Shown here: positions 2,908 through 51,237 of the stretch, piece by piece
How the letters are laid out: the number at the start of each line of letters is the position of its first letter
Position numbering within the stretch: the first letter of the stretch is position 1
DNA from: Bigelowiella natans CCMP2755
Taxonomy: Eukaryota; Protista; Cercozoa
DNA: 64,000 nt
Direction of reading: 5' to 3'
Assembly: GCA_000320545.1 (NCBI GenBank)
Contig: ADNK01002830.1
Location: 1 to 64,000 of the forward strand
Made by a program: the position numbers and the translations under genes
The notes under the pieces: model-generated
What the model was told of the DNA's origin: nothing
Databases searched by the model: none
What the model saw: only the letters and a program-made list of their open reading frames with translations

Positions 2908-4618
2908 TCAATGATGCTCCTCCTCTCCAAGCAACATGTCTTTCGCCCAGCTCAAAATCATGTCTGCCGTTGGATTTCCGTCGATGAACTTTGATGTCTC
3001 ATCATGTCCGAGAGACTTGAATTTTTTGGCTGTGACTACTTGGTCATTTGCACCTTTGACCATCGCACCATCAGCTCCACCAGGTACATAAATCGTGTTG
3101 TGACCCACGACAAATCCGTCGTCAACTTGGGTGAAATCTGTGAGATCGGTCCCATCGATGTTGATATAAGCTTCGTTCGCATGGAGTATACATGTGTTGT
3201 TGACATAAGTTTCGGCATATCCCTTTGGAGGTGGTCCTTGTGTTGACACGCTGAAGCAGACCGGAAGATACCTTTGATAATAAGGACGAAAGCATAATAA
3301 CAGGATGAGCTTAGAAAAGGCTTACAGATCATCTCGTGATATTTCGTTATTCTAGATTTGAGATTTACAAAAAAAGAAGCAGCACTGATTTTTCATGAGA
3401 TTCTCGATTTATTTTGGACGTCGTACGTACACGAAAGGGAAAACGTGCAGGCTGTTGCGAGAGATCTTTGAATGGCCATCGAAATCGGACTTGTGCCCTC
3501 CATACACGCAGAAATTGTGATGCATCTGCACGAAAAATTATGGTTATTTTCCATTGCTGAATGGAATTCCTCAATCGCAAACTTATCATATCACGTTAAA
3601 GTTATTGGCTGTCAATATGCACTGTTTTGTTGGTACTTTGAAGCAACGGTACATTGTGGTGGTGAAGTAACAATTAATAAGAACTCACGTCATAGTAGGC
3701 CGAGCCGTCGTCGTGGTCGAAGCAGCCCCCATCTGCAGCATAATTGGCTACAATGAAGTTGTGGTGCATATCATTTTCTGCAGGAACAGTGCTTGGTTTT
3801 CCATTGCGAATCGAAGTAATGTAAGGCAGTCTGTCCCAAGAATTGAAAGCTCCATGATCCGAAGACTCACGACATGTATTAAAGAGCAAGTTATCCACCA
3901 TCTCACAACCGCCCCCAAACCTAATGAGTGCATGGATGATGAGTGATGGAGAGGATGCTGATAATGATGATCATGGTAGCGTGATGCTTGAGGAATTGGT
4001 GATGGTAATGGTATCAACGATGTACTTTAAACTTTATAGTTGTATCGCTTTGTGAGTGTATAATTTGACCCGTCGTTGAAATTGATTGCAGCACGTGGCA
4101 AATCGAAGGCAATGTTCTTGGCGAGGCGCGTCTGAGCACTAACAGCCTGGAAGAAACAACTGGACTGCTTCTGATACATGCCAATCTGATAGCAAAAGTT
4201 GCTTTCGAACGTTGTGAAACGTGGCTGCTCCCCGCCCGTGCCGTCGTTGCCATTTTTCACACGACCCCAAAGGGCAACACCACTCATTCCCAGCCATGCG
4301 AATCTAAAATATCAACAGCAGCAGCAATAGCCCATACAATGAGTTGATAAATCAACGTGAGGTAAGTAGCTACCATAACAACTTCTGTCAGTCAAAACAA
4401 ACAATACTGCTATTTATTATATACAAAGCATACTCGTTTTTCATGATCGAAGTCCTGCGGTTGTAACCAGAGAGAAATACTGCGTGTGTTTCCAGGCGCA
4501 CAAACGTATTGTTACTGATGCTGATATCCTCGGTGCCCTCCAGTAAGACTGCACCCAATCGCTGCAAAGCCCAGTCACCTCCGGATGGAACGCCATGAGA
4601 CTCCATGTATCTGTCGTA

Positions 4619-4655
<37 letters not shown>

Positions 4656-5286
4656 CAGTGATGTTAGGTGCTAATGCTGGAGGGTAGTTATAATGTGCGA
4701 GGAAACAGCAGTAGCAGTAGTAGTAGTTGTTTTTGTTGTTGTGGCAGGATTCATTACGTTGGCCTGTTTGCGGTGAAGACAAGGTTATCGATCGAGATAT
4801 TGCGAACGGGATGATCCATAGTGCCTCTGATTTCGAAGATGTTGGCGAGTTGAGGCACCACAACCTCAGTTGGAGGTGGAGATTCGGTATCGTTTGGGTA
4901 GAAATAAAGTTGGCTGGTCGCTTCGTCGAAGAAAAACTCGTTGGGAGCATCGAGTTCCTCCAACACATTCTCAATGTACCATTCTTGTGCAGTGTCTGCG
5001 CCCTCTCCCCCCTGATGACCTCCTGCTCCGAATCGGAATTCATCCGGATTCACATGTGGAGCACGTCCAGAAACCATGTCATCTTGAGGAGAAGGGTTCC
5101 ATTCATCGTAAACCTGTCAACCATATCATTTGAGTTCAGTGTCATGGTATAAGCTTGCAAAGCAAAATGTAGTGGTAGTGTATGAGTGCATCGTCTACTG
5201 AGTGAGAGAGAGAGAAAGAGAGAAACAGAGAAAAAGTATAAATGTTGCCCATACTCGTCATACGAAGAATTGCAACGATTCTTATT

Positions 5287-28586: not shown

Positions 28587-28741
28587 ATAACTTTTACGTT
28601 AAACGATGAATCGATGTCGCAAGCATGAAACGTTAAGATATTCCTTCAAATACGTTAAAACCGAGGTGGGAAAGGGCCAAAAAAGTGGCAGAAAAACTCC
28701 AAAAAAGAAAAAGATACGCTGAGTGATATATACATATTATG

Positions 28742-28812
28742 GGGGGCAGCGGGGAATCGAACCCCGTTCACTTCGACCCGAACGAAGTATAATACCATTA
28801 TACCACTGCCCC
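28742..28812 (-). tRNA. tRNA-Pro (anticodon CGG)
   Basis: Cloverleaf: acceptor GGGGCAG/CTGCCCC, discriminator C, anticodon arm CTTCG-TT-CGG-GT-CGAAG, T arm CGGGG-TTCGATT-CCCCG. Downstream T-run at about 28701-28712 fits a Pol III terminator. Confidence 0.95.
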
Positions 28813-43769: not shown

Positions 43770-45376
43770 GTAAGAACGTGTGTGTGTGTGTGTGTGTGTG
43801 TGCATACACCTTCACCCAAATGAATCGGAAAATGAATAATGAAGATTCTGACAACCAAAAATTAAGGTAAAGTTTCTTCAAATCCTTGTGGGTATTACGG
43901 ATTACAGGGCAAGCCCCTACAACAATTACGATGCTTGCTGGCATCTTAATAAGAAATTTTATGAGAGATAAGGTACATCCGCTGTCTATCTTCACACTTT
44001 CACTCCTCTAAATTGTTGCGCATAACATTTTGGAATTAGAAAGCGGATTTCTGGAAGAAAATAGGAGAAGAGTCCAGGCATTCTATGCTTCATACGGTTC
44101 CACAAATACAAATATCTCTTAAAATGGTGCAATCTTGAGCAACACAGTTGTGCAACCTATAAATATCAGTTTCTGAACAAAATTAAAGCATCGGATTCCA
44201 AGAGTTCCACATTGAATTATCTGATCCAGGTTTATAAGCTATTTCCATACTCCCACCATGAATTTTACGTCAGTAACCCTTAACCCTAATTTTCAGCCCT
44301 TCTCCGCGCTCTTTGAAAAGGAATTGGAGGCATTCAGTGCGCCGCAATCCATCTTGAGATCTATCATCACAATCGAGGATCCCCTCTTCCCGAAGCCTAA
44401 TCGATTCTTTTTAATAGCTCAGATATTTGACACAGTAAACCATTCCCACGACCTGTTCGTTGCTGTTGAATCGTTTTCTCATCTCCTCCTCACAGAATTT
44501 AAGACTTTGGTAATTTCTTCTGTCTCCTCCAACGAAAATCAGGAATGTGCCAAGCATTTGGGGCCATATGTCGATGATATCTTCAAGCAAGTCATGGTTT
44601 CCATTGGGGATGATGAGACGGAAACTGTGAGAACTTCTGCCACAAAAGCATTAGCTTCCATGTCTTGCTATGTTCAAGATATTATGGTGAACAAGCCGCA
44701 ATTTCCTTTAATTCGAGAAGCACTAAAGATGACACAGATGGTTTATGCCATGGCAGGCCCTCCGAGCTAAAGATGTGTTAGCGAAGGTGCTCAAAAGTTT
44801 TAGCCAACAGCATCATGAACTAAAGGAAATCGACCAGAACTTGCTGGATTTCCTCACCGGATGTATTCGGTCAAATTTTAAGACGCTGCGGCCATTTCTA
44901 GGCGACATAGTGAAGCTGATTTCAAAGGACCTGTTTCCCTGTGATAACGTCGCGCCTCTAGAAGTCCTGCTGGATATAATCGAGAAAGAACAGTGGATCA
45001 AAGAAGATCGTCAAGTATGCATTAGATGGACATTTCGCATACTGTTGTTGAATCCGTCCTTCTGCATTGCTTATCAGCATGTTTTTTATTAAAATTAATT
45101 AAGTATGATAAAGATGAAGATGGTAAAGTCTCGTTGCAGCTAAAGGTCTCTGGTCCTGCGATCGTCTTAAAGTTTATCAAATTTATTTTGGACGCAGAGA
45201 GTGATATGGTTCTCTCTCTCTCTCTATCTTTCTATCTCTCTTTCTCTTACCCTCTCTTCTTCGTCTTCCCTATGTTCTGTTGTCTCCTGCCATACCTCTA
45301 CCAACCATCTAGACCAAATCGAACTTGTACGGTGTATCCATTCTCGCAGTTCTCGTCATCATATAAATATGTGTAC

Positions 45377-45410
<34 letters not shown>

Positions 45411-45948
45411 ATATATCTATATATATTAGTTTGAACTGGACGATTGGAACACCGTCAGTGCGGCGACAGCATGCGTCAGTTCCATCTTGAAGCTGCTGGA
45501 AGATTCTGCTCAATATAAGACAGCCGTCAAGCTTGCAAGCGAGGCGTTAGGGAAGGGAAACCTGGTAGGCGGCGCCTACCTCCTGCAAAGCATTTTGCTC
45601 GAGGTGACTGAGAAGGTTACGAATTTGTGGAGATCGGACGTAGAAATGGGCAAAATAGGCCGGGGATCCCTTCAAATCCTTCTTGAAGGGCTGAAGAAGG
45701 GTGCTAGTGACCAAAAAGGGGGGGAGGATGCTATGGCAGCCGTGGTGAATGCCATCCCCCAGGCGGTGAACCAGGTGATGGTCGCGGACATTCGCCAATA
45801 TCTGAAGCAAACGTTGTTAGAGGTTTCTTTTGACGGAGATAAAGGGGAGATGGACAAGGGTGGCAGCGACGACGGCGTGAAGGAAAAACCAAGCATCTAC
45901 GAAGTTGCGCTGGCAACACTGGACAAGGAATTCCCTGGAGCTACTTGA
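43333..45948 (+). CDS. Importin-beta/karyopherin-like HEAT-repeat protein (short), multi-exon
   Basis: Spliced start MMSAGPETFPPPLDEDNLIKCLEAVSS|VSPSVRKQAEEKLHQM and AGILIRNFM resemble IBN_N. HEAT-like DDETETVRTSATKALASM. Apparent +1 C at 44758-44760. Confidence 0.65.
43681..43802. repeat. Compound (CA)n-(TA)n-(TG)n microsatellite in an intron
   Basis: Directly visible; largely self-complementary. Confidence 0.95.
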
Positions 45949-46652
45949 GCGCATGGCGCAGTGCAGCTTCTCTGACTGTGCGATTCCAAGTTTACGATGT
46001 GCGTTAGCTTTATTTGCTAGCTGGACATTGTGACTTGCGCATCTGCGCGCGATACCTATGCAACAAAAGATGATTCTAGACGTGAGGGCCTGTGGTTGCG
46101 CAGATGCAACATTGTGATCAAGCTGCGTCATGTTTGCAAATGAATCTGAAAAGCACAAGCTCATGTCTTCTTGCTGCCACAAGATGCATGCCCTTTCATG
46201 TCTATATGTTAGATCAATATCTGTTTACAGTCGTAAGCTCGATATACATGCACAGCCAAAAACTAGAAAGCAATGTAGCCATACCATGTGTCTAGGCTGT
46301 GTGCATGGCTAGATGGTGGCAAACCACGACATTTGTGCAACACTACTGTGGACATATTGCATGAAAGGAGGTAACTAGATTTGGCAACGTTGTCAGTAAT
46401 GTAAAACTTCACAACAGTATATTATATGCATAAATTACTCAGGACTACGAACTACTTAGCCTTTCAGCAGCACAACAGCTGGCTAATTTTAAAGTTAATT
46501 TGCTCTGTATGTGTCTTGAATCGAATCACAAAAAACTACGATCATTTTCCCTTTGTATGTATCGCACTTCATACATTCTAATAAAACAGCATATTTGTAC
46601 TAATAAATTGCTGCTATGTGATAAAGAGATCTTTCTGTTCAAACGATCATAT

Positions 46653-47591
46653 TTAGACTGCTACTGCAACAGCTGCCATGACACCGAATCCGACAATAAA
46701 TGCAAGATAGTCCACGATATGGCATCTTTGTCTGGGATGCTTGTGATGATGAAGGAGAGACCGATGATCCTCACCCCCCTCTTCCTTATTGGGCTCTTTT
46801 CTGTCGCTCCCAAAGACCAGAAGCATATTATTTTTAGTTCTTTGATCGCCTTTATCACTTACATTTTGAAGTTTAAAACCCAAGGCCATGGCTGCCCAAA
46901 GCTTGTGAAACGCAATAGCAAGGCAAAGAACCCATGTTTTTTCATCGCTGTCTCCACCAGTTGCCACGACCAATCCATCAAGGACCGAATGTGCCGATAA
47001 GAACGCGAAGCAAAAAAGCGCCTTGCCTATAGAGGATGTGTCCATAGCATGATCATGACCTTGCTCGCCCTTTATAGATCCCATCGATTCACATCCGAGA
47101 AACAAGAATGTCCCAGCCGCGGCCCCTTGGACACATGTTACAGCCAGGTCGTTGTTGGAAGCATCCAGAACAGCAGCAATGAGAAGAGCAAGGGGAGTGA
47201 TGATTGCGAAGATTACGCCTAGGGTAAGAGCAAACCACTTTGGAATTCCTTGAGAATTTGATTTCCCATCATCATCCCAAGTCGACATCAAGTAACTTTG
47301 CAAAAGATCGAGTGATAGAAGGAGAACGAACGTCAACCCAGCCATTAATTCCGGATATGGATAATCGTCTCCAATGTTGTGAGAATCTTTGTAGTTGTCC
47401 CAACTTTCAATTGCATCCGCAAGCATGTGCAGAAGGGCTAAACCGACGAAAAGTCCGGCGGAATGAGCCTCTCCTGCACGTTGAACATCTGGCCTGTCTC
47501 GAGCAAACGGAAGGAATGGGAACATAATCCCAGCCATGCCAGCGATCAGGATGATGACCGAGGCGAGGATATCTGTGGTGTTAATGGTCAT
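46653..47591 (-). CDS. ZIP (SLC39/Zrt-Irt) divalent metal transporter, intronless, permuted helix order
   Basis: 312 aa, 8 hydrophobic segments. SAGLFVGLALLHML (TM2), YPYPEL (TM3), FAIITPL (TM6), QGAAAGTFLF (TM7), AHSVLDG (TM4), AIAFHK (TM5), GFGVMA (TM8). His-rich loops. Confidence 0.92.
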   Translation of the reverse strand: MTINTTDILASVIILIAGMAGIMFPFLPFARDRPDVQRAGEAHSAGLFVGLALLHMLADAIESWDNYKDSHNIGDDYPYPELMAGLTFVLLLSLDLLQSYLMSTWDDDGKSNSQGIPKWFALTLGVIFAIITPLALLIAAVLDASNNDLAVTCVQGAAAGTFLFLGCESMGSIKGEQGHDHAMDTSSIGKALFCFAFLSAHSVLDGLVVATGGDSDEKTWVLCLAIAFHKLWAAMALGFKLQNVSDKGDQRTKNNMLLVFGSDRKEPNKEEGGEDHRSLLHHHKHPRQRCHIVDYLAFIVGFGVMAAVAVAV

Positions 47592-48069
47592 GCTGCGTCC
47601 GGGTCAGCAAAGGAGATGAGAGAATTATGGGATGATCGCAGTCGAAGTGCGATTATTATCCCTCGGTGTATGTCCGACCCGATGATCGGAGCAGGCAGCC
47701 GGCTCTCTCTGTCTTAATGTTTGGTTTGTGTGGCCGCTCATATCTTCTAACACGGGAAAAATGATTCAAAATTTCCACTCTAGCTTTGTCGTCACCGATA
47801 AATCAAATCAGGTTCGGAAAGTATTTTAGTCATAAAATAGAAGGAGAATTAGCATATGCGTCAACATTTATTAGATTGTCGCTTTGTCATAAATAGACCT
47901 CGTTCTCCGTCCTTCTGCAGTTTCCGTTGTCCGTCTCTCTCGTCATCCCCCAACGACGATTTCAATCAGTAAAACCGTTGCCCTTCACATGCACTTTCCT
48001 TTCGGAACCTCCAATCCATAGAAAGCATCGTGGGTGTACTTACGTCTTGTTGTTTATTTACTGAAAGTA

Positions 48070-48846
48070 ATGGAGGGTAAGAAGGAAGCTGCCGACTCGA
48101 AAGCGGATAACAACTCGATGCCGGCTAGCAAGGGATCGATACCTCCGAAACAGGACTCTACCCCTGGAGAAACACCTCAACTACGAAAGTCGCTCAGAAA
48201 TAAACTGCCAGGTACCCTATTTCTCTTCTCAAATACATTTCAATCGTATTAGTTTTTAATCTTTCCGTGGAACAATATATGTACTTCTTGTTACTGAATT
48301 ACTTATCATTGATCACGCAGCACTCAAGACCTCAAAAGAACCTGAGATCCCAAAAAAGCGCCTAACTAAGAGGAACTACAACTCGAACATTTCGGTATTG
48401 TGATCCGCTAGCTCGTGATTTTGTTTGCATGCTGCTCTAATTAAGGATGTTCTTCTCTATAAATGATGTCGTGCATAAGGGGAACCGCCTAACCCGCTCT
48501 CGAATGCGAAGCTCCCAGAAGAATGTAACCAAATAATCAAGGAGAGAGGGTGAAAGAGAGATGGGGTTGGGGTTGGGGGGGGGTCTGTGAACAGCATAAC
48601 TTATTCTCAAATGACACCATTCTCGAAAGACCTGAGGGAATACAATATGATGATTTCCAGGATGGGAGTACCCAGCAAAAGTTAACGAAAGCGCAAGGAT
48701 ATCCATCTAAAGAGCCGCAACCGTCTGTTTCTACCTCATTTGCTCATCGTCTTAGGTATTGCTTAGATTGTTTTACGTTGCTGGTGATTCACAAGATTCT
48801 GATAACCTGTTTTCATATGATACATTTTTTCTGTCTGTCTTTTATG

Positions 48847-48884
<38 letters not shown>

Positions 48885-49386
48885 TGTTATGACCATTTTC
48901 TAGATTCAATGACTTCACGTTGATAACAGGATCAGCAGAGATAAAAAAGATAACAGTTTTGCGGTGAATCGTCCTTCACGCCCGATCTCAGCGAAGCCTT
49001 CGGTATATAACGACGATCAGTCTATGATGAATTCGGCACATATTGAGTATGTGTTCTTGGTGTAGTTTCCTCAGGAAACAGACATGGACGGTTTGCAAAT
49101 TGTTCCTGGTGATATAGAGCAGGTTCAGAACAAAGACGGATATCTTCCTGCTTCTCGTGACACGAACAAGTGCTTTTGATTCCCACACTGAATTGTTTTC
49201 AATTTTGACAATTTTTTTAGACCATCTACGAAAATAGAGTGGATATGGCACACGTTCATGCTTTACGAGCAAGTTCCTCTGGCCATACCATGCAACATGA
49301 TGGGCTACGTGCACAGAGGCCGACGAATGGGAATGGTGTGATAGCACAATTAATGCCTGAGTGTGTGTGTGTGCGCGCGCGCGCAC

Positions 49387-49423
<37 letters not shown>

Positions 49424-51237
49424 TGTGTGTGTTTGTGTGTAGGCGCGCATTCATCTATGAAAAAAACTTGCACTATAAAGCACCAATGGAGTGAATCTAA
49501 TTGACAGGATTAAAAGAATATAATTGTCATTCCTCAGGCATACCAAACAGCGTCTTGTCTCCCAATCCCGATGTTGACTTCAACAACAACAACAACAACG
49601 GTGTGCCAGAGGTTGTTACAGCTAACCTTAGCCTCTCTACCTCCTCCAAATTCAGAATGAAATTAATCTGAGCTTTTTCCCCATGTGCTACCCAGAATGG
49701 TCAGGTAGCGACGTTTGTCGAGAGCAGAGCAACAGGAGGCTTTTCTAGAAGTGCTAAAAGTAGATATCATCCCAGTAGCGGTTTCCAGAAGAATTCATCT
49801 GCTGGATCAAGGATAATGATGAATAGTCCTGCTGCTGTCATGGAGAGAGAGGGAAAGGACTACGTATCTCCAGCTACTCAATCAAATGTTCTCTCCCGAA
49901 AGGAGGCAGAACTCCGACATGGCGTGCGCACGTACGTACGTGTTTCATGTGACATTATTGCTACGGGGCGTCAGAATGATGAAGGGAAATTATTGTTTGA
50001 GATTTGATTATCATTTTTAATTATCCACAGGTTGTTGAAGACAGTCATCTTTGCCATGGCGTCTGCGTCTGGTTTGCTCGCGTGAGTCCCCCCCCCCCCA
50101 ACCCTCCTCTCTCTTTTTCACATAAGAGGAGAAACGAAAAGTGAGAATGTGCAATGCGTTCAAGGTTTTTATCATTATCAATGTCATCATCGTCATTTCT
50201 GTTTTCAAATTTATCGTAATTTTTTGTAAATTGAGTCACATCTTCTTAGGGGAATCACAACTTGCAACCTTATGAGCTACACTACACAGCAGTCTACTGA
50301 GACGTTTCTCAGTTTTTATCCTTACATGGCCACCGAGTTCAGTATTCTAGAAGTTTCACTGTCGACAGCCCTTGCCGCTTGTGCATCATCGTTAATTGCA
50401 AAGGTCAATCTACAAAAGTTAGAAAAAAGACCAACGTTGGAAAGTAGATTCCTCGAAACATAAAATCCTTTTTCATGTTCCTCGGAAGCCTCAACCGCCT
50501 TTTCACTTTGTAATACTTTGGGCATTGAAATGTAGGAATTTGCAGAAGATGGAGCTTGGCAACAGAGAGAGCAAGCTGCAAAAGCGAGAATTCTACTCAT
50601 TTTCTTTGGATACTTCACTTCAATGATATGCTCCCTCATCAATGTAACTTGTTCGACCCCGAACCTTTTGATAACAGCACTTTAGACTTTTGGACTGCTG
50701 ATGCACTAAAATACAATCCATAGGTGCAAATCGTGGAGCGCATGGTGTATGAAGAGAATGAGGACAGTGAATGGTATAAGAATGCTGACAAGGTGCGTCG
50801 TGTATTGGAAAAGCCTTGCTTGTCGGGGACATATGTTATGAGATGAGATGTCTATTCCTTTCCATAACTCTCCAAAAACCTGCCATCTGTACCATTTCAG
50901 AGAGATGATATCGCTCTCAACTCATGGGTTTCCCTGGCCGTTTGTAGGTTGATATTGAATCTGGTAGTAAAACTATTTGAAATCCTCGTAATTTGTTGAG
51001 TCTCTCTGAGACCTCAGACTTGTCACCTACTCGCAGAGTTGTTGGATGGTATCAATTAACGAATTTGGTCAATTTGCGAAAGATCGATATCGAGTAGAGG
51101 TAAGAGAGAAAGCAGTGATTCAGTTCTTTAATTGAATAAACAAAAAGTATGAATGCCTGGATGGGTATTTTTTTGGTCAGAGATCGGACGGGTTGCGGAT
51201 TGCATGGAATGCGAATCGTCGTGGAGACATAAGATAG
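48070..51237 (+). CDS. Hypothetical protein with disordered N-terminus and C-terminal hydrophobic segments, multi-exon
   Basis: ATG ORF MEGKKEAADSK followed by GT-AG-bounded exon-like segments, including ILLIFFGYFTSMICSLIN. No family recognised. Confidence 0.45.

What the first reader, a model, noticed from the sequence alone, without database searches (positions are those of the whole stretch)
46653..47591. ZIP metal transporter with internally permuted helices (TM order 1-2-3-6-7-4-5-8)
Established: in characterised ZIPs (ZIP1-3, Zrt1, IRT1, BbZIP) the metal-binding TM4 (HS/NxxE/DG) and TM5 (HE/HK) precede TM6 (F..TP.G) and TM7 (..AGTFLY). Seen: in one uninterrupted 312-aa ORF, TM3 (YPYPEL, aa~77-97) is followed by TM6-like FAIITPLALLIA (aa~116-142, nt 47246-47166) and TM7-like VQGAAAGTFLFLG (aa~149-169). 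Only then come TM4-like FLSAHSVLDGL (aa~191-212, nt 47021-46956), TM5-like LAIAFHKLW (aa~220-241) and TM8. The longest His-rich loop (DHRSLLHHHKH) sits before TM8 rather than between TM3 and TM4, with a short GHDH before TM4. Inference: swapping two whole hairpins keeps every helix in its in/out orientation and keeps these linkers cytoplasmic, so the fold and ligands (H201, D205, H229) could be intact. That would be a natural non-circular permutation of a transporter, possibly from TM4-7 duplication with reciprocal loss. I do not know of a described case.
Basis: partly seen in the sequence, partly recalled or inferred. Interest (0 to 1): 0.9.

Follow-up and report, generated by a model that had tools for sequence, protein, structure and literature searches.

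The report
ZIP metal transporter with swapped helix pairs
This alga's expressed, intron-free gene encodes a zinc/iron-type (ZIP) membrane transporter in which two pairs of membrane helices have traded places along the chain (1-2-3-6-7-4-5-8), a rewiring shared by all its chlorarachniophyte relatives and, as far as I could find, not described in the literature.

Summary
The 312-aa ORF at 46653-47591(-) is a ZIP protein (Pfam Zip 78.5 bits). Its matches are out of order: aa 115-166 match the TM6-7 part of the profile and aa 191-242 the TM4-5 part.

It is not an assembly artefact. One RNA contig and two DNA contigs span all three junctions without a difference. Ten full-length relatives carry the same order. 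They come from Lotharella, Norrisiella, Gymnochlora, Chlorarachnion, a spliced Bigelowiella paralogue and environmental eukaryotes, at 30-65% identity.

At least 85 canonical ZIPs hit the family profile in the reverse block order; none outside the family is collinear with it. Reordering the blocks in silico gives one end-to-end match to a canonical ZIP profile for 8 of 10 members, 15-28 bits higher for all ten. The family is one clade (100/100), so one old origin.

This scan had already noted the same swap at the paralogue locus (s1-738973).

The parts
46653..47591 (-). Complete intron-free ORF of 312 codons plus stop (46653-46655): permuted ZIP transporter
   Evidence: only 4 open codons lie upstream of the ATG (open frame 316 aa)
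46394..47731 (-). Extent of the unspliced transcript seen in an RNA run (two overlapping contigs, 46394-47337 and 47308-47731)
   Evidence: run X15 shows GT..AG-spliced joints in both neighbouring genes but none here. The 944-nt contig bridges all three block junctions. A 1334-nt contig in the protein's cluster fits this length.
47256..47591 (-). Block A, aa 1-112: TM1 (aa 7-27), TM2 (44-64, with H55), TM3 (79-100) and the first part of the cytoplasmic loop
   Evidence: Pfam profile 5-100; canonical profile 4-113; hydropathy
47076..47255 (-). Block B, aa 113-172: TM6-type helix (aa 119-142, with P133) and TM7-type helix (aa 149-169, AAGTF 158-162, E168), moved ahead of TM4-5
   Evidence: Pfam profile 231-286, E 3.4e-5; canonical profile 221-288, 41 bits; A158, G160, T161 and F162 invariant in alignment A3 and nearly invariant in A4
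46860..47075 (-). Block C, aa 173-244: conserved tail of the cytoplasmic loop (GHDH...DTSS, aa 178-187), then the metal-binding TM4-type helix (aa 191-212; H201 at 46989-46991, D205 at 46977-46979) and TM5-type helix (aa 220-241; H229 at 46905-46907, K230 at 46902-46904)
   Evidence: Pfam profile 177-228; canonical profile 154-224, 50 bits; invariant residues; codons checked
46656..46859 (-). Block D, aa 245-312: long, variable, His/Lys-rich cytoplasmic loop (aa 242-292, modelled as disordered) and TM8 (aa 293-312)
   Evidence: canonical profile 283-313; pLDDT below 50 for aa 253-287; lowest conservation of any segment

Best explanation
The gene encodes a working ZIP-family divalent-metal importer, probably for Zn2+ and possibly Fe2+ or Mn2+, of the eukaryotic ZIP1-3/Zrt/Irt-like 'HK' type. 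Along its chain two adjacent blocks have been exchanged. One block is the tail of the cytoplasmic loop plus TM4-TM5; the other is TM6-TM7. The resulting order is 1-2-3-6-7-4-5-8.

Each moved block is a helical hairpin that starts and ends on the cytoplasmic side. Every helix therefore keeps its in/out direction, and only cytoplasmic connections change: loops of 18, 21 and 51 residues. The helices are inferred to pack as in a normal ZIP. That places H201 and D205 (TM4), H229 (TM5) and perhaps E168 (TM7) around one metal ion. K230 would supply the charge that replaces the second metal site, as in human ZIP2.

The swap arose once, before the chlorarachniophytes diversified and before a gene duplication that left two paralogues in Bigelowiella. 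The simplest route is a tandem duplication of the TM4-7 segment followed by loss of the first TM4-5 and the last TM6-7.

Shown: the block order, its conservation, expression, single origin and ligand conservation. Inferred: the fold, the transport activity, the metal and the route of origin.
For: - Out-of-order Pfam hits.
- Reciprocal profile tests: at least 85 canonical ZIPs hit the family profile as A, C, B and none as A, B, C. Reordering the blocks restores a single end-to-end match in 8 of 10 members and adds 15-28 bits in all ten.
- One RNA contig and two DNA contigs from separate runs cross all junctions with 0 differences.
- The same order is found in transcriptome proteins of Lotharella, Norrisiella, Gymnochlora and Chlorarachnion, and in the spliced Bigelowiella paralogue at C1590, whose exons lie in the order A, B, C, D on the DNA.
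- The family is one clade with 100/100 support, split into two subclades that each hold a Bigelowiella gene.
- H201, D205, G206, H229 and K230 are invariant. In 82 canonical relatives the same columns read H 82/82, E/A/D, G 82/82, H 82/82 and K 81/82.
- In human ZIP2 the equivalent H175, E179 and H202 are needed for transport, and K203 variants lose most or all activity (PMC6527156).
- There are 8 hydrophobic spans, and the positive-inside count is 17 against 2.
- In an environmental relative the gene lies between two cobW genes. That family includes zinc chaperones (my own knowledge).
Against: - No coordinates were available. I could not show that the unaligned hairpin fills the vacated positions or that the ligands meet.
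- The model rests on only 13 sequences.
- In BbZIP the transport domain is helices 1/4/5/6 and the scaffold is 2/3/7/8 (PMC9873690). The new order raises chain crossings between the two domains from 3 to 5, which could hamper an elevator movement.
- D205 replaces the more usual E.
- No transport data exist for any member.
- No 12-TM or 10-TM intermediate and no relic of the lost helices was detected.
Confidence: 0.8

Rival explanations
1. The permutation is real, but the protein no longer works as an ordinary ZIP elevator transporter. The extra inter-domain connections would lock the two domains, so that it acts as a channel-like pore, a metal sensor or a regulator of other ZIPs.
For: - Domain crossings rise from 3 to 5, given the BbZIP domain assignment (PMC9873690).
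- The family sits on a long stem branch of about 0.6-0.7 substitutions per site.
- The new TM7-TM4 linker carries a conserved H-x-H...DTSS motif.
- The same genome keeps a canonical-order ZIP at C2989 that could do the ordinary job.
Against: - All the transport-site residues and the TM6/TM7 motifs are conserved as in active ZIPs.
- The new linkers are 18-51 residues long, and the longest is disordered, which gives ample slack for a shift of about 8 Å.
- The H-x-H...D..S motif before TM4 is also present in canonical relatives, so it was inherited rather than newly evolved.
Confidence: 0.14
2. The protein is really collinear. The apparent TM6-7 and TM4-5 similarities would be chance matches between hydrophobic helices, or cross-matches caused by the internal pseudo-symmetry of ZIPs (TM1~6, 2~7, 3~8, 4~5).
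For: - ZIP repeats do cross-match: PMC13192868 describes the symmetry.
- A weak hit of this possible kind was seen at another locus (L015).
Against: - Each block matches its own canonical region at 18-56 bits in all 10 family members, and never the symmetric partner region.
- At least 85 independent canonical ZIPs give the same reversed order against the family profile.
- The family-specific signatures sit in the displaced blocks: HS..DG, HK, the TM6 proline and AGTF.
- Reordering yields one full-length domain in 8 of 10 members and a higher score in all.
Confidence: 0.03
3. It is an artefact or a dead gene: a misassembly, a chimeric gene model, or a recent scrambled pseudogene.
For: The gene has no introns in an intron-rich neighbourhood, which can mark retrocopies.
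Against: - DNA contigs of 2591 and 3460 nt from two runs, and a 944-nt RNA contig, cross every junction with no differences. The DNA runs may share the source strain.
- The frame is intact and the gene is transcribed.
- Orthologues at 50-65% identity from other genera's transcriptomes keep the order and the ligands.
- An identical 227-nt piece occurs in a marine metatranscriptome.
Confidence: 0.02

Closest known systems
Eukaryotic ZIPI/ZIPII-type transporters (human ZIP1-3, yeast Zrt1/2, plant IRT1); nearest database relatives are canonical ZIPs of Perkinsus, choanoflagellates, oomycetes, a diplonemid and a mollusc ZIP1
   Same: - Pfam Zip membership, eight helices and a short N-terminus.
- TM4 motif H-S-x-x-[ED]-G and TM5 motif H-K, implying a single metal site with a lysine in place of the second site, as studied in human ZIP2 (PMC6527156).
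- TM6 proline, TM7 AGTF motif, and a His-containing cytoplasmic loop before TM4.
   Different: The chain order is 1-2-3-6-7-4-5-8 instead of 1-8. The short TM5-TM6 and TM7-TM8 loops are replaced by three cytoplasmic linkers, and the longest His-rich loop now precedes TM8.
BbZIP (Bordetella bronchiseptica ZIP; PDB 5TSA, 5TSB, 7Z6M, 8GHT)
   Different: - About 55 fewer residues align collinearly than for a canonical control model (176 against 230 of 233 for 5tsa). Foldseek TM-score by target is 0.43 against 0.64-0.66.
- BbZIP has a binuclear site. This family has K230 at the second site.
- There is no sequence-level PDB hit.
Proposed ancient circular permutation in the origin of the ZIP fold (4-TM ancestor duplicated, rearranged and fused; PMC13192868)
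   Same: Both involve re-wiring of ZIP helices with the packing kept. The present case shows that the fold tolerates such re-wiring.
   Different: That event is deep, hypothetical and circular within one repeat. This one is recent enough to be plain at sequence level, is internal (the termini are unchanged), and does not restore the ancestral repeat order.
Other permuted membrane proteins: CysZ/YihY against the mitochondrial ADP/ATP carrier (bioRxiv 10.64898/2026.03.31.715626); from my own knowledge, DsbB against VKOR and split or permuted transhydrogenase
   Same: Helix order differs along the chain while the spatial arrangement is similar.
   Different: Those cases are circular permutations or subunit reshuffles between distant families, inferred mainly from structure. 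Here an internal block swap lies inside one Pfam family, with clear sequence homology of every block and canonical paralogues in the same genome.

Membership tests
[quoted passage not shown] | Significant match to the Zip profile above the curated cut-off | tested here: met
   78.5 bits against a cut-off of 35.1, E 6.8e-22; the ESM Atlas feature search also returns only Zip clusters
[quoted passage not shown] | Eight transmembrane helices with both termini outside the cytoplasm | tested here: met
   8 hydrophobic spans; K+R 17 on loops assigned to the cytoplasm against 2 on the others; the model has the corresponding long helices. The orientation itself is inferred, not measured.
[quoted passage not shown] | Metal-binding motifs on TM4 (H-[SN]-x-x-[ED]-G) and TM5 (H-[KE]) | tested here: met
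   H201, S202, D205, G206 and H229, K230. H201, D205, G206, H229 and K230 are invariant in 12-13 family members and match the columns of 82 canonical ZIPs.
[quoted passage not shown] | Collinear helix order TM1 to TM8 | tested here: not met
   The order is 1-2-3-6-7-4-5-8. This is a difference in connectivity; every block is still homologous to ZIP.
[quoted passage not shown] | BbZIP-like three-dimensional packing | tested here: inconclusive
[quoted passage not shown] | Transport of divalent metal into the cytoplasm | not testable with these tools
   Needs complementation or flux assays
Circularly permuted protein | N- and C-termini moved to a new place, with the old termini joined | tested here: not met
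   TM1 is still first and TM8 still last. Only the internal segment TM4-7 is rotated, so the protein as a whole is a non-circular permutation.

The most novel reading that the evidence does not exclude
A whole clade of eukaryotic ZIP transporters has worked for hundreds of millions of years with two helical hairpins exchanged along the chain. This would be a natural, sequence-evident, non-circular permutation of a polytopic transporter. [quoted passage not shown] If these proteins transport normally, helix connectivity is largely dispensable for the ZIP fold and its elevator movement. They would also be a living precedent for the re-wiring proposed at the origin of the ZIP fold.
Probability: 0.7. 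Interest if true: 0.85.

Novelty: new variant of a known kind. Interest (0 to 1): 0.78.

Why it matters
- Natural permutations of polytopic membrane proteins are rare and usually inferred only from distant structural likeness. In this family every block is recognisably homologous to its canonical counterpart, and canonical and permuted genes sit in one genome. The rearrangement can therefore be studied directly.
- It tests how far membrane-protein folding depends on helix order and on the pairwise insertion of neighbouring helices.
- It tests whether the proposed elevator mechanism of ZIPs tolerates extra tethers between the transport and scaffold domains.
- It gives a precedent for the duplication-and-rearrangement route proposed for the origin of the ZIP fold.
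- It is a warning for annotation. Collinear profile searches report these proteins as fragmentary Zip hits, and sequential structure searches almost miss them (Foldseek TM 0.34-0.43; the ESM Atlas structure search found no ZIP).

Tried and rejected
- **Misassembly or chimeric model:** rejected from RNA and DNA contigs.
- **Splicing that would restore canonical order:** rejected. No joints lie inside 46394-47731, while both neighbours are spliced.
- **Bacterial origin as the reason for having no introns:** not supported. The nearest canonical relatives are eukaryotic.
- **Exon shuffling:** no support. In the spliced paralogue the A/B and B/C junctions lie inside one exon.
- **Intermediates or relics of lost helices:** none among the 150 best hits or in the loops.
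- **Sequence search of the PDB with the family profile:** no hit.
- **Metagenome contig scan with the family alignment:** nothing confirmed.
- **Word-index search with the family alignment:** added only one new member, P0161.
- **ESM Atlas structure neighbours:** no ZIP, all TM 0.34 or less by query.
- **cobW neighbours as a conserved context:** seen at one environmental locus. Not at a second one, and none of the genome's cobW matches lies on this contig.
- **A5, a mixed family-plus-canonical alignment:** made but not used for folding, because canonical loop residues misalign onto the TM7-type helix.
- **Non-sequential superposition and a check of ligand distances:** could not be done, because model coordinates are not exposed.

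Full report
**What is there**

The minus strand of 46653-47591 carries one uninterrupted 312-codon ORF. Only four open codons precede its ATG. The protein matches Pfam Zip (PF02535) at 78.5 bits, E 6.8e-22, against a cut-off of 35.1, in three separate stretches.

Scanning the protein in pieces shows why:

| Protein residues | Profile positions | Canonical helices | E-value |
|---|---|---|---|
| 8-103 | 5-100 | TM1-3 | 2.1e-9 |
| 115-166 | 231-286 | TM6-7 | 3.4e-5 |
| 189-238 | 177-224 | TM4-5 | 5.4e-6 |

The last 72 residues give no Pfam hit on their own. A profile of canonical relatives places TM8 at aa 281-311.

**The out-of-order match is not chance or symmetry cross-talk**

A profile of four family members was run against 1.84 billion representative proteins. 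It found eight further relatives below E 1e-28 and then a gap to E 1e-13.

- The near relatives align collinearly with the family profile, in one to three stretches.
- From E 1e-13 down the hits are canonical ZIPs, which match in pieces.
- Of the 140 hits outside the family, 85 or more match in the block order A (TM1-3), C (TM4-5), B (TM6-7). The rest show only one or two blocks. None shows A, B, C.

The reverse test used a profile built from 82 canonical ZIPs. It hits all ten full-length family members as profile positions 4-113, then about 221-288, then about 154-224. I then reordered the blocks inside a script. Eight of the ten became a single domain covering positions about 4-313, and all ten gained 15-28 bits.

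The residue-level alignments show the block edges. Block B starts at the canonical TM5/TM6 boundary (the 'PKW' motif). Block C starts in the tail of the cytoplasmic loop, at an H-x-H...D..S motif that canonical relatives also carry just before TM4.

**It is real DNA and real mRNA**

- Run X15 is an RNA run: it shows GT..AG-spliced joints in both neighbouring plus-strand genes.
- X15 covers 46394-47337 and 47308-47731 with no joint and no difference.
- Its 944-nt contig bridges all three block junctions (about 47255, 47075 and 46859).
- DNA contigs of 2591 nt (X1) and 3460 nt (X3) span the whole gene without a difference. They may come from the source strain.
- A marine metatranscriptome holds an identical 227-nt piece (all).

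The gene therefore has no introns, in a neighbourhood with many.

**It is conserved**

The genome is 91.4 Mb. Its proteins carry Bigelowiella natans labels in public sets. The same helix order is found in these relatives:

| Protein | Source |
|---|---|
| P0002, P0003 | Lotharella, 64% and 62% identity |
| P0004 | Norrisiella, 50% identity |
| P0008 | Gymnochlora |
| P0012 | Chlorarachnion reptans |
| P0010 | Second Bigelowiella gene, contig C1590 |
| P0007, P0161, P0157 | Environmental eukaryotes |

The five exons of P0010 lie on the DNA in the order A, B, C, D. The same genome also has a canonical-order ZIP at C2989.

A maximum-likelihood tree of the reordered family plus 82 canonical ZIPs puts the family in one clade. 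Support is 100/100, and all 200 bootstrap trees need only one change of state. Two subclades each contain a Bigelowiella gene. The swap therefore happened once, before that duplication and before the sampled genera diverged. Its canonical sister group is unresolved. The nearest named canonical relatives are eukaryotic: Perkinsus, choanoflagellates, an oomycete, a diplonemid and a mollusc ZIP1.

**Function-bearing residues**

- H201, D205, G206, H229 and K230 are invariant across the family, down to 30% identity.
- The TM7 AGTF motif is invariant in one alignment and nearly so in the other.
- H55 and the TM6 proline are nearly invariant.
- In 82 canonical relatives the same columns read H 82/82, E48/A19/D11, G 82/82, H 82/82 and K 81/82.
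- In human ZIP2, changes to the equivalent H175, E179 and H202 abolished transport. Changes to K203 abolished or strongly reduced it, and the lysine's charge stands in for the second metal site (PMC6527156).
- Both moved hairpins are about as conserved as TM1-3 and TM8, and the new loops are the least conserved parts.

**Topology and fold**

Eight hydrophobic spans are present. The loops that should face the cytoplasm hold 17 Lys+Arg and the others hold 2. Each moved block is a hairpin that begins and ends on the cytoplasmic side, so all helix directions are kept. This step is an inference from topology.

As a control I modelled a canonical relative, P0024, in the same way (pLDDT 88.6). The table compares residues aligned on the same BbZIP chains.

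| BbZIP chain (length) | Permuted model | Canonical control |
|---|---|---|
| 7z6m (238) | 181 | 234 |
| 5tsb (224) | 168 | 221 |

The control's Foldseek TM-score by target is 0.64-0.66. The deficit of 53-54 residues is the size of one helical hairpin. That is what a sequential aligner must drop if the packing is kept and the order is changed.

This result is consistent with fold retention but is not proof.

**Mechanism**

In BbZIP the transport domain is helices 1/4/5/6 and the scaffold is 2/3/7/8 (PMC9873690).

- The canonical chain crosses between the two domains three times.
- The permuted chain crosses five times.
- The swap opens the short intradomain TM5-6 and TM7-8 loops.
- It creates cytoplasmic linkers of 18, 21 and 51 residues.
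- These look long enough for the roughly 8 Å elevator shift, though that is an inference.

My best reading (0.8) is a working ZIP importer with a single ZIP2-like metal site. The main rival (0.14) is a real permutation with an altered mode of action.

**Origin**

Swapping two adjacent blocks equals a circular permutation of the internal segment TM4-7. The classical route applies: tandem duplication to 1-2-3-4-5-6-7-4-5-6-7-8, then loss of the first 4-5 and the last 6-7. Each step adds or removes an even number of helices, so every intermediate keeps its topology. The second subclade keeps a long His-rich loop after TM3, as canonical ZIPs do, which fits this route. No intermediate or relic was found, and the paralogue's introns do not mark the junctions.

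**Comparison with what is known**

Nine full-text searches found no description of a ZIP with a changed helix order. The closest idea is the proposed ancient duplication, circular permutation and fusion at the origin of the ZIP fold (PMC13192868). A 2026 preprint infers a one-helix circular permutation between CysZ/YihY and the mitochondrial carrier from structure alone.

This scan had already reported the same swap at the paralogue locus (s1-738973). My tests were made independently on this locus and agree with it.

**Verdict**

I class it as a new variant of a known kind. The pieces still missing are a direct structural superposition and a transport assay.

Noticed in passing
window 46394-47731 against 44800-45104 and 47968-49537: The ZIP gene has no introns, while both flanking plus-strand genes are densely spliced (nine GT..AG joints of 63-202 nt in 5 kb). 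Its paralogue at C1590 has four introns. This suggests intron loss or a retrocopy origin of this copy.
   Followed up: partly
L005:4579-8709 (environmental eukaryote contig; also L006-L008): The permuted ZIP P0007 lies between two divergently oriented cobW genes (a family that includes zinc chaperones, from my own knowledge). One of them is 75% identical to a Bigelowiella gene at C1997. This may be a zinc-related gene cluster. It is not conserved at a second environmental locus (L017).
   Followed up: partly
G000, many contigs: The genome gives 34 cobW (PF02492) matches on more than 15 contigs, an apparently large expansion of this metallochaperone family.
   Followed up: no
L015:3570-3869 and 4529-4945 (G000 C1220): Another ZIP-like locus. 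A weak match to the TM7-8 part of the Zip profile (E 0.014) lies about 700 nt upstream, on the same strand, of a good match to the TM5-6 part (38.9 bits). It could be a symmetry cross-match of TM2-3, the end of a tandem ZIP gene, or another rearrangement.
   Followed up: partly
protein P0005 (Lotharella globosa, UniRef A0A7S4DGF1): A 56-residue Cys-rich insertion sits between the TM4-type and TM5-type helices. It begins with Val and ends with Gln, which fits GT...AG. It looks like a retained intron in the transcript assembly.
   Followed up: no
window 28741-28812 (-): tRNA-Pro (CGG), the only Rfam or ARAGORN hit in the window.
   Followed up: yes
window 46610-46836: A marine metatranscriptome run (X17) holds a 227-nt contig identical to the 3' end of the ORF, so this or a very close strain is transcribing the gene in the sea.
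   Followed up: no
window 45203-45427, 48825-48892, 49239-49442: (TA)n and (CA/GT)n microsatellites flank the gene. Short-read contigs break at them.
   Followed up: no
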